NCBI GenBank assembly: GCA_021613535.1
Contig: CP075497.1
Location: 5,146,001 to 5,210,000, forward strand
Direction: 5' to 3'
Origin: Adineta vaga
Taxonomy: Eukaryota; Animalia; Rotifera
Length of the DNA stretch: 64,000 nucleotides
The position numbers were made by a program, and so were the translations under genes. The first letter of the stretch is position 1. Each line of letters begins with the position of its first letter. Shown here piece by piece: positions 41,922 through 50,216 of this stretch. Under the pieces are notes generated by a model. The model was not told the DNA's origin, made no database searches, and saw nothing but the letters and a program-made list of their open reading frames with translations.

Positions 41922-42593
41922 CGTTGAGCATATTATTAATTATTACTATGTCCAATATAGGCCATGATTTCTATTGATTTTCTAGATGTAAATATAAACA
42001 AATATAGATTTTGATATCAACTGAATGGTAATAGAGAAGAACTATGATTCATTGATAAACGATGGATTGTTAAAAAAGAAATCCTCTCAAAATTCAAAAG
42101 AAAACATTTTCATGCAATCAATCAAATTTTCATCATATATTTTCGATGAAAATTTCTCTTCTACTTTCAAATTAATTGTTTGTTAATTGAAATTTATTAC
42201 AGATGGCGTTAGTCATCATTTCGCACATTTATACTCTTCAATTTAATCTAGGAAAAATTCATTTCCTTTTATTACTTCTTGATATAAAATGATTGATGGA
42301 TAAAATATCCACCTCTATGTAAGAACGAATGACCTTCAAACCTTATATTTCCAAATATTTCTTCGTTTGATCGAATAGTACAACTACTCTTACATACGAA
42401 AATTATTCATCATAGGTACTTCATAAAGAAAAGTGAGCATCCGATAGTCATACACAATATTTTTTTCGCTTTCCTCTTCATGGCTCAGTGCCTTTGGTTA
42501 TTTTCATTTTGTCATTACGTATCTCTCATTTACCTTTACTTCTCTATATCTCACAGAATTTATCAATAAAAAAATCGATCATATAGGCAAACC

Positions 42594-43155
42594 ATGCAAT
42601 ATTGGATTCTTTCGTTCGTTATTTTAATTTTATTAAGTAAGTGTATAACAAAATGAATCACAAATGAATACAATTTTTTCATTCAAATTTAGTTCCATAT
42701 GTAACAAGTTTAAAATGTTACGTTTGCAATTCAAATGAAGATCCCGCTTGTGATTTTGATGATCAACTAAGTAATTTTGCCAAGCAATGTCCTGAAAAGG
42801 AAGATCCATATTGTCGAAAAATCTCCCAAAAAGGTGAACAAAAAAATTCTAAAATCTAATTCTAAACTCTTTTCTTTTATAGTTGATGGATACATGAGTA
42901 TTATACGAGCATGTGGTTCTAAAATTGGATCAAAATTATGTTATAAAACTGCTGGAACACATACTGTATGAAAAATAGTCATATCAATTATATCTATGAC
43001 GTTGTTGTTTGTTTTTCTTTCTTTTACAGGCAAATGTTTGTTCGTGCAATGACGATCTTTGTAATACTGCCGTTACATTTAATGGACCACAACGATTCAT
43101 GACAATTCTTTCATCAGTTGTTGCTATAACAATTACACTGATTCTTCTTCGTTAA
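42594..43155 (+). CDS. Ly6/uPAR three-finger (quiver/sleepless-like) GPI-anchored protein, 4 exons
   Basis: Signal peptide MQYWILSFVILILL; LKCYVCNSNEDPAC...CPEKEDPYCRKISQKVDG...RACGS...CYK...CSCNDDLCN; hydrophobic C-terminal GPI signal. Confidence 0.85.
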
Positions 43156-43396
43156 TTAGTAACAGAAACACATTATGAAATCAATCGAATTTTGTTTAAA
43201 CACCAGTTTTCATAGGACATACATTTCCTCTTCCCCCTTTTTTTCTATTTTTTTTTGATTTGACACTAATTTTTTGTTTGATTGTCTTTATTTTTCATTT
43301 CCTTTTAGTACGAAATTCTTATTATTTTTATTTTTAGAATAGTTTATTCTTTCAGGAATTTTACAAAAGAAAGAATAGATTACATTATTAGTATGT

Positions 43397-44785
43397 TTAG
43401 TATTCAAAGTCTTCATCATATTTTTCATCGTTATTCTGATTAAGAGAATCGAATAATGATGTCGAGACTGGATATCGAAGTATTGCAATACATCCACCGA
43501 AACCAAGTCGAAATTGTTGTCCTTCAGGTGACCGATCGGTAACGATATGTAAACGAATATTCAAGTCTTTATAATGTTCAGTTAGATAATCAATAAAATT
43601 CATTTCATCGATGCATTCGATCTGTTCACGTTCATTTTCTTTTAGATTCATTTTTAATTTCTTTTGTGCTTCTTCTTCATTATTCGCCACGATGACAATG
43701 ATTTCTCCACCACGTTTTTGATAAACATAACGTTTTGTTATTAAATCTTCCCAAATAATAATTCGATCGATTAAACCACTTCCTTCATTAATAATCAATG
43801 AGGTTTCGTCGACACCAATTGCATATGAAACTGTATTGATATCGTTCATTGTTGACGATAAATTGATTTGAGAAAAAATTTCATTAAGTAATTGTCTTTC
43901 TTGTGTTAATTTCATATCAGCAAAGATATCACTACATAAACGAAGTGTTTCTTGTAATCCATTGTCACCACCATAGCTAACATCGATTGTACGAAGAACT
44001 TTATTTTGAATTTGTAAACCAAGAAGTTCACTTTTAATTAATTCATGTTTTAAATTTGCTGAACCACTTAAAATAAACCCATCAACGTTAGTAAGACCAT
44101 GTTGTTGATTGTTTAAAAAGATGGATTTTGCATTTTCAGCGACTTTCGTTAGATAATTATGAATAGCTTCACGACGTAAACGATCGAAACGAAGAGCTGA
44201 TTGTCCACCGCGACCATGTTTTTTAGGTAAACTAATTTGAAAGCGTTTTAAAACTGTTGTACCTTGTTGAGGATCAACTCGAGCAAATAATGATCCATTG
44301 CCATCAATGACTATAATTCCATATCGACGTGAATTGAAATCATTAGCATTATCCATCAATTGTTTTTGGAGAAAATCTGTTATAAAATGTGATTCACATC
44401 GATATAAACCATGTTGTAAAGGTTGTAATGGTTCAATACACATGGAAATTTTACTTTCACGATGTTGTTCTTCATCATAAACAATACCAGAGTACAGAAC
44501 AAGACCATTGGCAGGTAATGTATTTTGTGTGTATAAACGAAGTCGTCCTTGTGCAGATGATAATGCTTGTTGAACATTATGCCGTGTTTGAGATGATTTA
44601 ATACATGATGATAGACCATATTCATCGGTAAGAAGTTTCATTGTTCGTGATAATTGTGATTGAGCTGGAATAATCATGGTTAGTAGAGATGTACCACGAC
44701 CTCGTAATGACGATAAATATTGAATCGTTCGACGAAGTTTCCATTGTTCGATGAGAATATCATCGTTGGGCATTGATGCAGCCAT
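43397..44785 (-). CDS. Divergent eukaryotic class-1 peptide release factor (eRF1-like paralog), intronless
   Basis: GTS loop, DEYGLSSCIKS (TASNIKS equivalent), YRCESHF (YxCxxxF), PKKHGRGGQSALRF, DVSYGGDNG, TDRSPEGQQFRLGFGGCIAILRY, acidic tail. Confidence 0.93.
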   Translation of the reverse strand: MAASMPNDDILIEQWKLRRTIQYLSSLRGRGTSLLTMIIPAQSQLSRTMKLLTDEYGLSSCIKSSQTRHNVQQALSSAQGRLRLYTQNTLPANGLVLYSGIVYDEEQHRESKISMCIEPLQPLQHGLYRCESHFITDFLQKQLMDNANDFNSRRYGIIVIDGNGSLFARVDPQQGTTVLKRFQISLPKKHGRGGQSALRFDRLRREAIHNYLTKVAENAKSIFLNNQQHGLTNVDGFILSGSANLKHELIKSELLGLQIQNKVLRTIDVSYGGDNGLQETLRLCSDIFADMKLTQERQLLNEIFSQINLSSTMNDINTVSYAIGVDETSLIINEGSGLIDRIIIWEDLITKRYVYQKRGGEIIVIVANNEEEAQKKLKMNLKENEREQIECIDEMNFIDYLTEHYKDLNIRLHIVTDRSPEGQQFRLGFGGCIAILRYPVSTSLFDSLNQNNDEKYDEDFEY

Positions 44786-45621
44786 TGAAAAATATAATAA
44801 TTCGATTGATAATTTGTTTTATGATGATAGAACTGATGTTCATCATGCTTTTTTATAGTCGAGAATGAGATCAAGGAATCGTTTAGCACGTGGAATGTAA
44901 TAACAAAATTTCAGAGTTTCATAAGGTGAAATACTTATGAAATTCTCATGTTATATACGGTGAAATGTTATTGCGAAATTATCGTAGAGAACAGAACAAA
45001 AGGAAAGAAGAGGAAAGGAAAATATTTTTATGATTAAAATTTATCGTTCTCTTTACCAGCCGAAATAATTGTAGAAAATACTACAAAAGTACAAATCTTG
45101 CTGAGATTTAGGTTCTATGACGATAGATTTAATGAATTTTACTAAATAATTCCACGTGGTCTATCAACTCGAAGATCTTTCTCAATATTCTAAACATTTC
45201 AGTCAAATAGTTTGTAGTAAAAAAAATTCATTTGAAACTTTAATCAATCTTATCTCTAGATAAAAAAAAGTAGATGAGTACCTCTATAGAATTCCGATGT
45301 GTATCAAATATGCCTAAACTTGAAATTTTAACAGTAACAATCATGCCATTTCTTTTCACGGTTCACAAAAACGAAAAAAAAGAAGCTAGCTGCTGTACAG
45401 ACACACATGACGACAACAACAACAACGACGACGACGACAAGGAAATGGGAAAAGACAAAACCAGAAACCTGAGTTAAAAACAAACAAAACACAAGAGCAC
45501 CAACGGAGAAGAAAAAAGGAGAGAGAGAAACAAAACGAAAGGAATGCATTCTCATCATCGCATTAGTTTGTTTTCAAGATATGAAAGACCATAGTGGAGT
45601 AAATTGAATTTGTTCATTCTC

Positions 45622-47584
45622 TCAAGATTCACTTTTAATTATTGTTGATGATGGTGATGATGTTATCGGTTTTCCGACATCAGTCATGTCCATTGAATAT
45701 GGATGAAAATCATAACGTCGTCGTTGACGTGCAGCACCTCCACTATTCACCATGGTTGGACTTGCTTGTGTATGATACATATGTGTACCTGTATGAACTT
45801 TTAAATTACCTTTAGTTGTAAATGCTCGACCACAAACCTAGGAAACAAAAATGAAACTTTCTTCCTCGAAATTCATCAAAAAAACAAATCTTACTTCACA
45901 TTTATATGGTTTTTCACCCGTATGTGTTCGATTATGTATTTGTAAAGCTGAAGCAGATGAGAAATTTTTTGAGCAAACATTACAAACATGTTGTAAGATT
46001 GATGAGGATCGTCTTAGATGATTTTTTTCATTCGTTCCTAATGATTCATCTATTAACATTTTCGATGACATTGATAGATCTTCTCCATTATCATTCATAC
46101 CATTATCTTTATGTTCATCATGTACGGATGTATTTGAATTATTCAATGCTGCAGCAGCAGCAAGAAATGGAAATGTACTAGCAGCTAGATTTGGAAAGAA
46201 TTGAGGATTAAATAAATTAAATGGTGATAAATGATTTGTTAAGTTTCCATTTGAATATGTTGATGCTGCAGCTGCTATAGCAGCAGCTAATGAATTGGAA
46301 ATTGCCGAAGATTTTGTATCTTCATCTTCTTCAAGTTCATCATTTTTAACTGATTGACTATCACGCTTTTCATGAGAAGAAAAGAAAAATCAAAATTAAA
46401 TTTCAAAATAATTTTGTTTTTCTACATACTTGAATATCGATTTGTGATTCATCATCTGCACTCGATAATGATCGTTCCGAATCAATTGTACGTAAAGCTT
46501 CTTCAGCTAATGATGCATTATTTGGATCAACTAAGAGTAAAACGAAAAACTGATTTTTTATTTTTATAAGAATAAATTGCTCGTATTTACCAAGATGATC
46601 TTTCAAATGTAAACGTAATTGTTCAATATTATTCAATTGTTTTTGACATATTGAACATCGATTAGATTTAATTAAACCATTATCCTCAGCAAGTCGATGA
46701 ACATTCATATGTGTTTTAAGATTTCCTTTAGTAGAAAATGCTCGAGCACATATTCGACACCGAAATGGTCGTTCACCAGTATGTGTACGATAATGCATTT
46801 TTAATGCACTTTGACATGAAAGTATACGTTTACAAACGACACATTCATTCGAATCACTTTTATTTGTTGTTCGCTCAAGTTGATCAATCATATCTTTTAA
46901 TTTTGCCATATTTGGATCTTCTGGTTCACCTTCATGTTCTTCCATTTGAAATTGAATCGATGATGAAATTGGTTGTTCTTCATCAGATTTAATTGAAGTC
47001 GAAGAAAAATGATCACTTGTAGATAAATCTAATGGTGATGTGACAGATCTTTGATCTTCTTCAGTTTGAATTATTAATCCACCTCGATCTTCTTCGTCAT
47101 CATCATCGTCATCTTCCTCCTCTTCTTCATTATTGTTATTATTGTCACCAATATTGTCGTCGTCATCATCATCATCATTATTGTTTTCAATTGAAATAGT
47201 TGATGTTATTTTGGTTAATTTATCTTGATGTTGTTGAAGATGAACTTTTAAATTTGAACGCGAAGTAAATTTTTGCGAACAAATAGTACATGAATATTGT
47301 TGTGATGAAAGATTTTCTAAGAAGAAAACAAGTTAAAATTCAAAATCTACATAAAGATTTAAAAAAAGTCTACCTTCATTTTCAAATTGATTGTGTTTTT
47401 GTTGATAAACTTTCAAATGGTGTTGAAATTGTTTGATCATTAATGTTTGTAAACGTTGTTGTTCTTGTATAGCTGCTAATTGAATTTTTAATTGAAATAA
47501 TTCCGGATCGAGATTTTCGCCTTTTGAATGGTTCATATTTATATCATGTAATGTTTGCATTCGATTATCATTATCATGTGACAT
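45622..47584 (-). CDS. SALL: Spalt-like (SALL) C2H2 zinc-finger transcription factor
   Basis: Q-rich segment; double fingers [45 protein letters not shown] and [45 protein letters not shown] (SAL box); an upstream exon is possible. Confidence 0.9.
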
Positions 47585-50216
47585 TCTATTTTGAGAAAAA
47601 AGTAAACAAAACAAGAAATTAGTCGAGATGTTTTTTGTCTACCTATTATGAAATATTAACGAATCAATAAAAGAAAACATGAGATGAAAAAAAACAACAA
47701 CAACAATAACGAAAAGACGACGAGGAAAATGAAATGAAGAAAAACTAGAGATAGAGACGCGCGATTATTGTTTATTAGAAACGGCCGTCTACTGCTAGAA
47801 GAAAACAGCTGATCTCTTTTTTTTCTTTTCGAACGAGATATGTATATTATATTATATATAGATATATATATGTATATGAAATCCATATCTCGATTTCACA
47901 CGCACATGGTAAACATTCGAGGACAAATATCAAATTGATTTCAATCAGCTGGATGTGTCAATCTCTATTTTAAACATTTTAGAATATTCTCTTTCTCGAT
48001 CGATCCAATCACTAATACTTACATATTCATTCTGATCAAAATAAATGTTTGCATCGCGCCCCTATTACATTATCTTTTTCTATATACATATACATATATA
48101 TATACACCCAAATCTATCTATCTTATTCCTAATGCATGAATTATATTCAATAAAAACATTGTTGGCTCTTTTTCTTCGCTTTTTTTATATCAATGTTCTC
48201 TATCTATGCACATATTATTTTGATTGCGTGTTTCGCCTTCTAGAACGGGCATATAAACGAACGGACGCAAAGAAACAATAATATCTATGAATATAAGCCA
48301 ACAATCGTTTCTTCTTCTTCTTCTTCTTCTTCTCTTGTCTCAAACACTCCATCCAACAACGTAGGAAAGTTTGTTTTCGATTAAAATATCGATACACAAA
48401 CGTATCTCGCTTCGCTTAATAATAATAAAGAAAGAGAGAGAGAGAGAGGAAGAAACTACATTGAAAGGAAAGCAAAAAAAAACTAAAGAAGATTAATCAA
48501 CATATAAAATAGATAATAGCAGTCTAATATCTACTAATGCGATATAATACTACAAATGTATACACGTACCCAGACTAGGAGAATTTACTTGAATAGAAAT
48601 CAATGGACAGCAGCAGCAAAGAACATATGAAAAGGAGAAGAAGAGAAAAAAAGAAAGTCGTTTATAGCCATATGCCTTATATTCCAATCGAGCGAATTTA
48701 TGAAAGCAAATATGAGCATACTCTTCATCTCTACAGACATTTATGATTATGGTATTGCAATGAAATGACAACAACGTCGATTGAGAGAAAGATATATATA
48801 TATATAATTCTTCATCATAATAAGACGAGAAAGAAAGATATAGACATAAAGAGAAACTCATAAAAACATATAAATCAGTCAGAAGAGAGATGATAGATAA
48901 TCGATTTATTAAATCATCGAAATATGTTATACATTTCTATGAAAAAAGAAAAACAGTTTTCTTTTTCTTTTTACTTAATATATATATATATAAACGGAAT
49001 TTTAATAAGAAGAAAATTTTTTATGACTGAATTTTTTTTTCCGAGTAAATATATGATATCACTTAATCGGATAAGAGAATTAATAAAATTTTATTGTTAA
49101 ATATTCTCATTGGGAATTCTTACCTTCTTCTTCTTCTTATTCTTTAATATACCAGAGAAAAAAAATCGTATGCTTCTGTCTCTAAATGCTGACTATTCTC
49201 AATAATATTACAATGATCAATATATATATAGTTATTGTTTTTCGAGACGAAGCAAATGCACACGCGAACTATAATCCATGAATAGTGTATGCATGCGCAA
49301 ACGCTAATAATGTTGATACAAGGCTTTATGAATTGATATATACATACACACGTCGTAGCAAAATTGTATTTATATTTTAGTATCATATCTAGTTGAATAT
49401 CTCCTTAAATGTCATCACAATCTTACCTCATTGATGTGCGAAACTCAAATCAATTCTTGTTTTAGATAGAAATGTTAAGTAATTATGTTGAACATACGAA
49501 ATAGAGAGGAGGAGAAGAAGAAAAAGAAGAGGCTCATCATCAAATACAAAAATGAGGGATAAACGAACTAAAATGCTCAGTAAAAGATTAACATGCTTGT
49601 GCACATTATTTGAAAAAGAGAAAAGAAGAGAAAAAAAAATTTCATTCATCGGCTTTTTTTTGTGTCTTGTTAGAAATGCACGTTCTCTGTTTCTTTCTCT
49701 CTCTCTCTCTTTCTTATTTTATATGTTAACAAGCCTTCGAAACGATCATCTTAATCATTATCATTTGTACAAATTCCTAATTATATTTTACTGATGACTT
49801 TGTCCATATGTTGCCGTTTCATAGATATACATGTAGGAAACAGCATGAGCTTCTGTCCCTTCGTTTTTTTTGCGCTTTAAATACATACCCTAATGCGAAA
49901 AAAATTTTCTTCTGAAAATAAAAAGAAGAAATAATCTATTCTCTATCGTATATGTTCGATGGTCAACAATTGTTTTTCCTCCCTCTCTCTCTTTCCTTTT
50001 TCATCGGTCATTTGCAAATCTGTTGCTGCTTCTCATATATATATATATATGCATATATATGTATATATTTTTTAATATTTAAACAAGAAAGCAAGCAACA
50101 GATGTCGATATGTCCAAGAAGGCGACGATAGCCAATGCCGCTTTCGTTTATATAAATATATATATATATATGCGCATAAATCTAATTATAAATAGAGATG
50201 AGATTTGACAACATAA

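What the first reader, a model, noticed from the sequence alone, without database searches (positions are those of the whole stretch)
43397..44785. Intronless, highly diverged eRF1 paralog with a rewritten stop-codon recognition motif but intact GGQ
Seen: a full-length 462-aa release factor. The catalytic PKKHGRGGQSALRF (GGQ at about 44201-44209), GTS loop, E55/Y125/C127 equivalents and the eRF3-binding GFGG..ILRY plus acidic tail are kept. The normally near-invariant TASNIKSRVNRLSV reads LSSCIKSSQTRHNV (about 44575-44614) and YLCDNKF reads YRCESHF. It has no introns, unlike the other conserved genes here. Established: animal eRF1 is extremely conserved; TASNIKS, S70 and YxCxxxF decode stops, and changes there accompany altered stop specificity in ciliates; giant viruses also encode divergent eRF1. 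Inference: this is a second, non-canonical release factor (retrocopy or horizontal acquisition). It could read only some stops, act codon-independently in ribosome rescue (e.g. after desiccation damage), or modulate readthrough by titrating eRF3.
Basis: partly seen in the sequence, partly recalled or inferred. Interest (0 to 1): 0.85.

Follow-up and report, generated by a model that had tools for sequence, protein, structure and literature searches.

The report
Conserved divergent eRF1 paralog in bdelloids
Bdelloid rotifers carry, beside their normal stop-codon-reading factor eRF1, a second intronless copy that is transcribed and conserved, keeps the catalytic site, and has a rewritten stop-codon-reading surface, so an animal with a standard genetic code may have a second kind of release factor.

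Summary
Window 43397-44785 (-) is one uninterrupted 462-aa ORF with all three eRF1 domains. GGQ, the GTS loop, E55, I62-K63-S64, R68, V71, Y/C/F of YxCxxxF and GFGG..LRY are kept. TASNIKSRVNRLSV reads LSSCIKSSQTRHNV and YLCDNKF reads YRCESHF.

It is a third eRF1 gene. The canonical eRF1 sits on two other chromosomes as multi-exon genes with unchanged motifs.

The paralog is not decaying:
- Intronless copies exist in Adineta, Rotaria and Didymodactylos; those of Adineta and Rotaria share the window's gene order.
- dN/dS is 0.08-0.26, and 8 of 9 allelic or strain SNPs are synonymous.
- The rewritten motif is fixed across about 40 family members.
- RNA-type contigs from three studies cover it unspliced, at low depth.

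Best reading: a working class-1 release factor with altered stop-codon preference, probably weak on UGA (S70N).

Its origin is unresolved. Trees place it outside Metazoa (AU p=0.016 under LG+C20), but the signal shrinks with better models and vanishes without the N domain. No donor was found.

No paper describes it. I rate it a new variant of a known kind, of moderate to high interest.

The parts
43397..44785 (-). CDS of the divergent eRF1 paralog: 462 aa plus a TAA stop, no intron
43291..44844 (-). Approximate transcript extent: 5' UTR of about 59 nt, 3' end between 43291 and 43396. It abuts or overlaps the 3' end of the convergent QVR-like gene.
   Evidence: RNA-type contigs of runs X1, X5 and X10, table 8
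44351..44785 (-). N (decoding) domain, aa 1-145. It holds 25 of the 47 sites that are invariant in canonical eRF1 but switched and fixed in the paralog.
44687..44695 (-). GTS loop, G31-T32-S33, retained
44573..44614 (-). Rewritten NIKS loop, LSSCIKSSQTRHNV (aa 58-71). I62, K63, S64, R68 and V71 are kept. The changes are T58L, A59S, N61C, R65S, V66Q, N67T, L69H and S70N.
44384..44404 (-). YxCxxxF motif reading YRCESHF (aa 128-134). Y, C and F are kept. The changes are L126R, D128E, N129S and K130H in human numbering.
43919..44350 (-). M domain, aa 146-289, dN/dS 0.07-0.18
44201..44209 (-). Catalytic GGQ (aa 193-195) inside the unchanged stretch PKKHGRGGQS
43400..43918 (-). C domain, aa 290-462, with a paralog-specific insertion (about aa 309-319) and an acidic tail
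43472..43504 (-). GFGGCIAILRY (aa 428-438), the counterpart of the GFGGIGGILRY eRF3-binding motif
   Evidence: the role of GILRY as stated in PMC2613156
42689..43209 (+). Convergent neighbour, a small spliced QVR/Ly6-like gene. It is part of the conserved gene order.
45345..47617 (-). Upstream neighbour, a spliced zf-C2H2 gene. It is part of the conserved gene order.

Best explanation
This is a bdelloid-specific third eRF1 gene. It is old, intronless and single-copy, and it sits among ordinary animal genes. Selection has kept it since before the known bdelloid families split. It most likely still works as a class-1 release factor. In that reading it enters the ribosomal A site with eRF3 (C-domain motif kept, inferred). 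It reads a U-purine-purine stop through the retained GTS, E55, IKS, R68, V71 and Y/C/F scaffold (inferred). It hydrolyses peptidyl-tRNA through its unchanged GGQ loop (inferred). Its decoding surface has been rewritten and then frozen, so its preference among stop codons or their contexts should differ from canonical eRF1. S70N, together with R65S and N67T, points to weaker UGA decoding, that is a UAA/UAG-biased factor. Shown here: existence, paralogy, transcription, conservation, purifying selection and fixation of the new motif. Inferred: ribosome and eRF3 binding, catalysis and the direction of the specificity change.
For: Paralogy:
- Two canonical multi-exon eRF1 loci with intact motifs lie on C2 and C5.

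Conservation:
- Intronless orthologs occur in A. ricciae, A. steineri, Rotaria sp., R. magnacalcarata, R. sordida and Didymodactylos, and in about 30 unnamed environmental sequences.
- The order zf-C2H2 | eRF1-like | QVR | cyclin is shared by the Adineta and Rotaria loci fetched (A. ricciae, A. steineri, Rotaria sp., R. magnacalcarata).
- The window is colinear with A. ricciae over 10 kb.

Selection:
- dN/dS is 0.08-0.26 overall, 0.07-0.22 in N, 0.07-0.18 in M and 0.12-0.36 in C.
- 8 of 9 allelic or strain SNPs are synonymous.

Motifs across 40 family members:
- GGQ is present in 38 of 39 scorable sequences.
- Q66-T67-R68-x-N70-V71 is invariant except in one degenerate copy.
- YRCExHF is nearly invariant.
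- Position 61 is C in 30, S in 4 and N in 4.

Divergence from canonical eRF1:
- Of 194 columns invariant in canonical eRF1, 104 are kept and 47 are switched and fixed. 25 of those 47 lie in the N domain.

Transcription:
- Unspliced RNA-type contigs come from three studies. A DNA run as control covers all bins and shows no splice-type (GT..AG) joint.

Published mutagenesis:
- S70A and S70T selectively lower UGA decoding, and A70 makes Euplotes eRF1 UAR-only (PMC3025575; PMC3632111).
- N61, R65 and N67 matter for all three stops.

Convergent or related case:
- Among about 150 cluster representatives, only the paralog, P0126 and P0142 combine R126, H130, Q66 and a non-N61.
- The P0126 mRNA-like contigs carry an in-frame TGA, so its owner reads UGA as sense.
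Against: - No functional assay exists.
- In human eRF1, R65A and N67D cripple release at all three stops. The paralog could therefore simply be a poor release factor unless compensated.
- P0126 keeps S70, so the shared motif does not map simply onto loss of UGA reading.
- Contig depth is low, 3-14 against 30-170 for the neighbours. Contig depth is a poor measure of expression.
- eRF3 binding was not tested.
- The expression condition or tissue is unknown.
Confidence: 0.5

Rival explanations
1. It is a redundant omnipotent eRF1. It decodes all three stops like the canonical factor and is kept for expression in a particular stage, tissue or stress state (eggs, desiccation recovery), much as many retrogenes are.
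For: The scaffold residues that contact the stop codon are kept: GTS, E55, I62, K63, Y125, C127 and F131. GGQ and the C-domain motif are kept. eRF3 restores much of the activity of some decoding mutants, such as S70A and K63A. Contig depth is low, which fits restricted expression.
Against: 47 canonical-invariant sites are switched and then fixed, more than half of them in the decoding domain. That is not expected from mere subfunctionalisation of expression. R65, N67 and S70, all shown to matter in human eRF1, are replaced in every member.
Confidence: 0.2
2. It is a regulator or competitor. It binds eRF3, ABCE1 or the A site but terminates poorly, and so tunes readthrough, NMD or recoding by titration.
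For: The C-domain eRF3-binding motif and acidic tail are conserved. The NIKS-loop residues needed for efficient release in human eRF1 are changed. Depth is low.
Against: A pure competitor has no need for GGQ. Yet PKKHGRGGQS is identical in 36 of 39 scorable members, and the M domain has dN/dS 0.07-0.18, as low as the N domain and lower than C in every pair. The one copy that lost GGQ (Didymodactylos P0041) also lost GTS, NIKS and C127, and looks degenerate.
Confidence: 0.15
3. It is a codon-independent rescue factor. It releases peptides from stalled or damaged-mRNA ribosomes, like a Pelota with a GGQ or like Vms1/ArfB-type hydrolases.
For: GGQ is kept while the decoding loop is changed. Bdelloids survive desiccation and radiation, which damage mRNA (general knowledge, not tested here).
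Against: Codon-independent relatives (Dom34/Pelota) lack NIKS, YxCxxxF and GGQ altogether (PMC2613156). Here the decoding scaffold is retained and the new motif is under tight constraint, which points to sequence-specific reading. Structural matches to Pelota are far weaker than to eRF1.
Confidence: 0.08
4. It is a decaying retrocopy or annotation artefact without function.
For: It is intronless, single-copy and 41% identical to canonical eRF1.
Against: The ORF is intact in every bdelloid genus sampled, and gene order is conserved in Adineta and Rotaria. dN/dS is 0.08-0.26, 8 of 9 SNPs are synonymous, and it is transcribed.
Confidence: 0.02

Closest known systems
Canonical eukaryotic eRF1 (ETF1/SUP45)
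   Same: It has the same three-domain architecture and fold. GGQ, the GTS loop, E55, I62-K63-S64, R68, V71, Y-x-C-x-x-x-F and GFGG..LRY are all present.
   Different: Identity is only about 40%. TASNIKSRVNRLSV is replaced by LSSCIKSSQTRHNV and YLCDNKF by YRCESHF. There are three small paralog-specific insertions and no introns. It coexists with two canonical copies in the same genome.
Ciliate variant-code eRF1s and ciliate eRF1-2 paralogs (Paramecium, Tetrahymena; Atkinson et al. 2008, PMC2613156)
   Same: These are second, divergent eRF1 copies with a variant NIKS motif but conserved YxCxxxF and GGQ. Tetrahymena eRF1-2 is 31% identical to eRF1-1 and also falls on a long basal branch where long-branch attraction cannot be excluded.
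   Different: The ciliates have reassigned stop codons. I saw no sign of a variant code in the rotifer, and its canonical eRF1 is intact. According to that 2008 paper, only ciliates depart from N-I-K. The bdelloid paralog (CIKS or SIKS) would be such a departure in an animal.
Euplotes and Blepharisma UAR-only eRF1 (Eliseev et al. 2011, PMC3025575)
   Same: The serine at position 70 is replaced. S70 is decisive for UGA recognition. In the paralog, position 70 is N in all members but one.
   Different: Euplotes has A70, not N70, and its NIKS loop is otherwise close to canonical. The effect of N70 has not been measured.
Unnamed environmental eRF1s P0126 and P0142
   Same: They are the only other sequences among about 150 cluster representatives that combine R126, H130, Q66 and a non-N61. 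P0126 is the best ML placement for the paralog clade on the full alignment. The P0126 mRNA-like contigs hold an in-frame TGA.
   Different: P0126 is only 39% identical to the paralog, against 47-50% to ordinary protist eRF1s. The affinity disappears when only the M and C domains are used. P0126 keeps S70. P0142 sits on a gene-dense, intronless, giant-virus-like contig.
Giant-virus eRF1 (Marseillevirus-size genomes and giant-virus MAGs in IMG/VR)
   Same: These are intronless eRF1 genes outside the cellular canonical lineage, 32-37% identical to the paralog.
   Different: All 17 readable viral copies keep NIKSRVNR[LQ][SA]V, and none has the paralog's motif. They are not a plausible source.

Membership tests
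eRF1/aRF1 class-1 release factor family | The three Pfam domains eRF1_1, eRF1_2 and eRF1_3 score above their curated cut-offs | tested here: met
   54.6, 113.6 and 56.6 bits against cut-offs of 23.8, 27.1 and 25.8
eRF1/aRF1 class-1 release factor family | GGQ motif at the tip of the M domain | tested here: met
   PKKHGRGGQS at aa 186-196. It is identical in 36 of 39 scorable family members.
eRF1/aRF1 class-1 release factor family | NIKS motif (N61-I62-K63-S64) within TASNIKS | tested here: not met
   It reads LSSCIKS. I, K and S are kept, while N61 is C in 30 members, S in 4 and N in 4.
eRF1/aRF1 class-1 release factor family | YxCxxxF motif | tested here: met
   YRCESHF fits the pattern, but all four x positions differ from the canonical YLCDNKF.
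eRF1/aRF1 class-1 release factor family | GTS loop and E55 | tested here: met
   G31-T32-S33 and E55 are present and conserved.
eRF1/aRF1 class-1 release factor family | C-terminal GILRY-type eRF3-binding motif | tested here: met
   GFGGCIAILRY. The pattern GFGGC..[LIM]LRY is conserved in the family. Binding itself was not tested.
eRF1/aRF1 class-1 release factor family | eRF1 three-domain fold | tested here: met
   The AF2 model has mean pLDDT 71, with N-domain 10-residue blocks from residue 11 at 72-92 (seven of thirteen at 87 or above). Foldseek TM is 0.81-0.82 to the human N domain, 0.75 to the M domain and 0.69 to 3e1y_A.
eRF1/aRF1 class-1 release factor family | Stop-codon-dependent peptidyl-tRNA hydrolysis on the ribosome | not testable with these tools
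   This needs a reconstituted termination assay.
Canonical metazoan eRF1 orthologs (ETF1) | It is the organism's ortholog of ETF1, with high identity to other animals and nested within Metazoa | tested here: not met
   It is 41% identical to Octopus eRF1, while the loci on C2 and C5 are 60-88% identical per exon. Placement on the Metazoa stem is rejected (AU 8e-6 under LG, 0.005 under C10, 0.016 under C20).
Dom34/Pelota | Lacks GGQ, NIKS and YxCxxxF, and has a different N-domain architecture (PMC2613156) | tested here: not met
   GGQ and YxCxxxF are present. Foldseek TM to Pelota/Dom34 is 0.24-0.35 against 0.41-0.69 to full-length eukaryotic eRF1 chains.
Retrocopy of the host's own eRF1 | Intronless copy of an intron-bearing parent gene | tested here: met
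   The paralog has no intron in any bdelloid copy examined, and its RNA is unspliced. The canonical genes have at least 5 short introns.
Retrocopy of the host's own eRF1 | Branches with the host's (rotifer or metazoan) eRF1 | tested here: inconclusive
   On the full alignment, sister placement to the bdelloid canonical eRF1 costs dlnL 63, 44 and 35 under LG, C10 and C20 (AU 1e-4, 9e-4, 0.002). The penalty shrinks with better models. With the M and C domains alone, the Metazoa stem is not rejected (AU 0.10).
Retrocopy of the host's own eRF1 | Poly(A) remnant or target-site duplication | tested here: inconclusive
   There are A-rich runs downstream of the stop, but nothing diagnostic. None is expected at this age.
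Horizontally acquired gene | Nested inside an identifiable donor clade, with a much better non-metazoan than metazoan match | tested here: not met
   The best non-bdelloid hits are all 38-42% identical and are fungi, plants and animals alike, at 335 against 332 bits. The nearest neighbours in trees are unnamed long branches that change with the data partition. Viral eRF1s do not carry the motif.

The most novel reading that the evidence does not exclude
Bdelloid rotifers use the standard genetic code, yet run two class-1 release factors with different stop-codon ranges. One is the omnipotent canonical eRF1. The other is a UGA-blind or UGA-weak, UAA/UAG-specific paralog, whose decoding surface either converged on, or was acquired from, eRF1s of organisms that read UGA as sense (as P0126's owner does). 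The ratio of the two factors would then set UGA readthrough or recoding genome-wide.
Probability: 0.22. Interest if true: 0.85.

Novelty: new variant of a known kind. Interest (0 to 1): 0.62.

Why it matters
eRF1 is one of the most conserved proteins in eukaryotes. Departures from the NIKS loop have been reported essentially only in ciliates with reassigned stop codons (PMC2613156). Here a whole class of animals has kept, for its entire known radiation, a second eRF1. Its catalytic and partner-binding parts are unchanged, and its decoding surface has been rewritten and then frozen.

If its stop-codon range differs, it is a natural experiment on how eRF1 reads stops. It would also give a regulated way to change termination or readthrough in an animal, and a ready-made N domain for engineering stop-specific release factors, for example for non-canonical amino-acid incorporation. 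The test is a standard one with existing assays.

Tried and rejected
1. **Giant-virus origin.** A scan of IMG/VR with P0142 alone found nothing. A scan with the alignment found 20 viral eRF1 loci; 18 were examined and 17 were readable. All 17 have a canonical NIKS loop and are 32-37% identical, so I rejected them as a source.
2. **P0126 or P0142 as donor lineage.** They share four derived decoding states with the paralog and give the best ML placement. However, P0126 is closer to ordinary eRF1s than to the paralog, and the affinity vanishes with the M and C domains alone. I kept this only as convergence or a weak lead.
3. **treekit AU test.** It did not finish in two 288-s runs, and a free or constrained IQ-TREE search timed out. 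I replaced them with a placement scan over all 74 backbone branches plus AU tests under LG, C10 and C20. The backbone was held fixed, which is a limitation.
4. **ESM Atlas on P0142.** It returned only generic eRF1 clusters and no taxon.
5. **Naming tree neighbours.** Only Amorphochlora, Anaeramoeba, a cercozoan MAG and plant or lichen sequences carried names. The decisive neighbours are unnamed.
6. **A dedicated eRF3 partner.** A Pfam PF03143 search of the genome plus PDB naming found one canonical eRF3 (C3) and one truncated eRF3-like locus (C5). Expression and conservation of the latter could not be checked, so it is not used as evidence.
7. **Literature.** No paper links eRF1 with bdelloids or Adineta.
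8. **Complex prediction.** Not run, because the eRF3 partner is a multi-exon gene and no unjoined reference for it exists.

In the trees, the bdelloid canonical eRF1 is represented by residues 1-247 of the database model P0270 (A. steineri).
Full report
**1. Observation**

The window holds one uninterrupted ORF at 43397..44785 on the minus strand, 462 aa. It passes the curated cut-offs of all three eRF1 Pfam domains. It matches solved eRF1 chains end to end at E about 1e-92 to 1e-94 and about 40% identity. An AlphaFold model built from a 26-sequence alignment has mean pLDDT 71, with the N domain mostly at 80-92. It superposes on the human eRF1 N domain (TM 0.81-0.82), M domain (0.75) and full-length eRF1 (0.69).

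GGQ is aa 193-195 (44201-44209). LSSCIKSSQTRHNV is aa 58-71 (44573-44614). YRCESHF is aa 128-134 (44384-44404). GTS, E55, GFGGCIAILRY and an acidic tail are present.

**2. It is a paralog, not the organism's eRF1**

The genome has 100.8 Mb in 6 contigs, and the window is C6:5.146-5.210 Mb of a 13.9-Mb contig. The nearest named relatives are Adineta species, so this is a bdelloid rotifer, most likely A. vaga (my inference).

Searching the genome with Octopus eRF1 finds two further loci, C5:10678332-10679963 (+) and C2:7693969-7695622 (-). Each is split into at least six exons that are 60-88% identical to Octopus eRF1. The window gene is only 41% identical. The exons of both loci read TASNIKSRVNRLSV, YLCDNKF and GGQ.

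I examined these multi-exon genes exon by exon only, and built no joined protein.

**3. It is transcribed and really intronless**

I laid contigs of four runs on window:41500-47400. Three runs from three studies behave as RNA:
- They show 49-64-nt GT..AG (or CT..AC) joints in the genes on both sides.
- They leave the intergenic stretches 42091-42484 and 44849-45242 uncovered.

A fourth run behaves as DNA, with all bins covered and no splice-type (GT..AG) joint. The RNA-type contigs cover 43291/43396..44844 with no joint inside the gene. Depth there is low, 3-14 against 30-170 for the neighbours. Contig depth is a poor measure of expression level, so I claim only that the gene is transcribed and unspliced.

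**4. It is old, conserved and under purifying selection**

Orthologs at 67-86% identity occur in A. ricciae, A. steineri, Rotaria sp., R. magnacalcarata and R. sordida, and in about 30 unnamed environmental sequences. Didymodactylos carnosus has two copies, at 53% and 42% identity. Every other eukaryotic eRF1 is 38-42% identical. No monogonont or other animal ortholog ranks above the canonical eRF1 background.

All copies examined at DNA level are intronless. In Adineta and Rotaria they share the order zf-C2H2 | eRF1-like | QVR | cyclin. The window is colinear with the A. ricciae contig over about 10 kb.

Nei-Gojobori dN/dS among Adineta and Rotaria is 0.08-0.26. By domain it is 0.07-0.22 for N, 0.07-0.18 for M and 0.12-0.36 for C. 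dS is partly saturated. Of nine allelic or strain differences seen in the reads inside the CDS, eight are synonymous and one is A147V in the N-M linker.

**5. The rewritten decoding surface is a fixed derived state, not drift**

Across 40 family members:
- GGQ is present in 38 of 39 scorable sequences.
- Q66-T67-R68-x-N70-V71 is invariant except in the degenerate second Didymodactylos copy.
- YRCExHF is nearly invariant.
- GFGGC..[LIM]LRY is conserved.
- Only position 61 wanders: C in 30, S in 4, N in 4.

Of 194 alignment columns that are at least 95% invariant in 18 animal, fungal and plant eRF1s, the paralog keeps 104. It has 47 switched to another residue that is itself fixed. 25 of those 47 lie in the N domain, which is 31% of the length.

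The main Didymodactylos copy reads TASCIKSSQTRNNV and YRCDNHF. That is an intermediate state between canonical and the Adineta/Rotaria form.

**6. What the changes mean, from published mutagenesis**

- In human eRF1, N61S/D, R65A, N67D and R68A lower release at all three stops. R65 and R68 are thought to position the factor on rRNA.
- S70A and S70T, and S33A and S33T, lower UGA decoding selectively (PMC3632111).
- A70 is necessary and sufficient for the UAR-only specificity of Euplotes eRF1. Human S70A/G73S is UAR-only (PMC3025575).

The paralog keeps T32, S33, E55, I62, K63, R68, V71, Y125, C127 and F131. It replaces N61, R65, N67, S70, L126, D128, N129 and K130. A retained scaffold with fixed replacements at specificity positions argues for stop reading with a changed preference, most plausibly weaker on UGA. 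Codon-independent action is less likely, because Dom34/Pelota lacks these motifs and GGQ altogether (PMC2613156). Pure titration is also less likely, because it would not need the perfectly conserved GGQ loop. This step is inference, and N70 itself has never been assayed.

**7. A related or convergent case**

Among about 150 representatives of 50%-identity clusters, only the paralog, P0126 and P0142 combine R126, H130, Q66 and a non-asparagine at position 61.

P0126 lies on three independent 1.5-kb mRNA-like contigs. They carry an in-frame TGA and end in TAA, so its owner reads UGA as a sense codon and its eRF1 should not recognise UGA.

P0142 lies on a 16.5-kb gene-dense, intronless contig with LRR paralogs, a DSP phosphatase and ORFans. 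That pattern is giant-virus-like.

This strengthens the idea that this motif combination goes with a changed stop range. However, P0126 keeps S70, and its nearest relative P0387 has a canonical NIKS loop with YRCDSHF.

**8. Origin**

In ML trees the paralog clade has a long stem (0.56 under LG+G4, 0.94 under the mixture model). It falls outside the Metazoa+Fungi+Plants group, among long unnamed branches.

I scanned its placement over all 74 branches of a fixed backbone:
- Sister to P0126 is the best placement.
- The Metazoa stem costs dlnL 55.3 (AU 8e-6) under LG+F+G4, 36.3 (0.005) under C10 and 27.2 (0.016) under C20.
- Sister to the bdelloid canonical eRF1 (represented by P0270 residues 1-247) costs 63, 44 and 35.5 (AU 0.002 under C20).

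The penalty falls steadily as the model improves, which is the signature of long-branch attraction. With the M and C domains alone, the P0126 affinity disappears, many placements are accepted, and the Metazoa stem is not rejected (AU 0.10).

No donor is identifiable. Fungal, plant and animal eRF1s are equidistant, at 335 against 332 bits. P0126 is closer to ordinary eRF1s (47-50%) than to the paralog (39%). The 17 readable giant-virus eRF1s keep the canonical loop.

The gene sits mid-chromosome among ordinary animal genes. I put an old retrocopy with accelerated N-domain evolution at about 50%, horizontal acquisition at about 40% and other routes at about 10%.

**9. Comparison with the known, and novelty**

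The closest described things are the divergent eRF1-2 paralogs of ciliates. They have a variant NIKS, conserved YxCxxxF and GGQ, and a basal long branch (PMC2613156). Also close are the stop-restricted eRF1s of variant-code ciliates.

The bdelloid gene differs in that it is in an animal where nothing seen here suggests a variant code, beside intact canonical copies. It also carries its own motif set.

Databases hold the proteins under automatic names, but full-text searches found no paper on a bdelloid or rotifer eRF1 paralog. The scan's own notes hold nothing on it.

**10. Verdict**

| Question | Verdict |
|---|---|
| Observation | confirmed |
| Conserved, expressed, divergent eRF1 paralog | about 0.9 |
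| Working release factor with altered stop preference | about 0.5 |
| Origin | unresolved |
| Novelty | new variant of a known kind |
| Interest | 0.62 |

Noticed in passing
G000:C5:15436535-15436837 (L060, L062) against G000:C3:4099842-4100144 (L058, L061): The genome has a canonical eRF3 on C3, with a PAM2 motif, a GTP_EFTU domain, and a domain 3 that scores 133 bits to human eRF3A. It also has a second eRF3-like locus on C5. Only domains 2-3 of that locus are recognisable: 68% identity to C3 in domain 2, and domain 3 at 94 bits. The 215-aa open frame just upstream has no GTPase or any other Pfam or PDB match. It may be a truncated eRF3 C-terminal paralog (the eRF1-binding part) or a pseudogene. 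Its expression and conservation were not checked.
   Followed up: partly
P0270 (Adineta steineri database model, 642 aa): The canonical eRF1 of A. steineri is annotated as a fused model of one and a half copies. It reads TAANIRS (S60A, K63R) in both halves. The divergent paralog of the same species is one of the few that keeps NIKS (LSSNIKS, P0014). This could be chance or compensation.
   Followed up: no
L023:6001-7383 (Didymodactylos carnosus, P0041): This is a second Didymodactylos copy of the paralog, next to a Mutator-type transposase gene. It has GGQ changed to GGA and has lost GTS, NIKS, C127 and GFGG. Its ORF is still intact at 460 aa. It is either a degenerating duplicate or one with a new function.
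   Followed up: partly
L026:91-1440 (also L027, L028): This is an orphan eRF1 (P0126) on three mRNA-like environmental contigs, with an in-frame TGA and a TAA stop. Its owner is an unidentified eukaryote that reads UGA as sense. Its eRF1 reads TASSIKSRQTRQSV and YRCDTHF.
   Followed up: partly
L025:8001-9215 and the whole 16.5-kb contig: This eRF1 (P0142) reads SIKS, YRCGSHF and KKHHKGGQ. It sits on a gene-dense, intronless contig of 42% GC with three identical-length 205-aa ORFs, several LRR paralogs, a DSP phosphatase and ORFans. The contig looks like a giant virus, but no IMG/VR relative was found.
   Followed up: partly
window 43180-43396: The 3' ends of the paralog (-) and of the convergent QVR-like gene (+) abut or overlap. 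RNA-type contigs 43180-43320 and 43291-44140 of run X5 overlap by about 30 nt.
   Followed up: no
window 43025 to 46610: Two RNA-type runs (X1, X10) each hold a contig with a joint that skips 3584 bases (AC..TG ends, only 20 letters on the shorter side), jumping from the QVR-like gene into the zf-C2H2 gene. It is probably an assembly chimera, and it remains unexplained.
   Followed up: no
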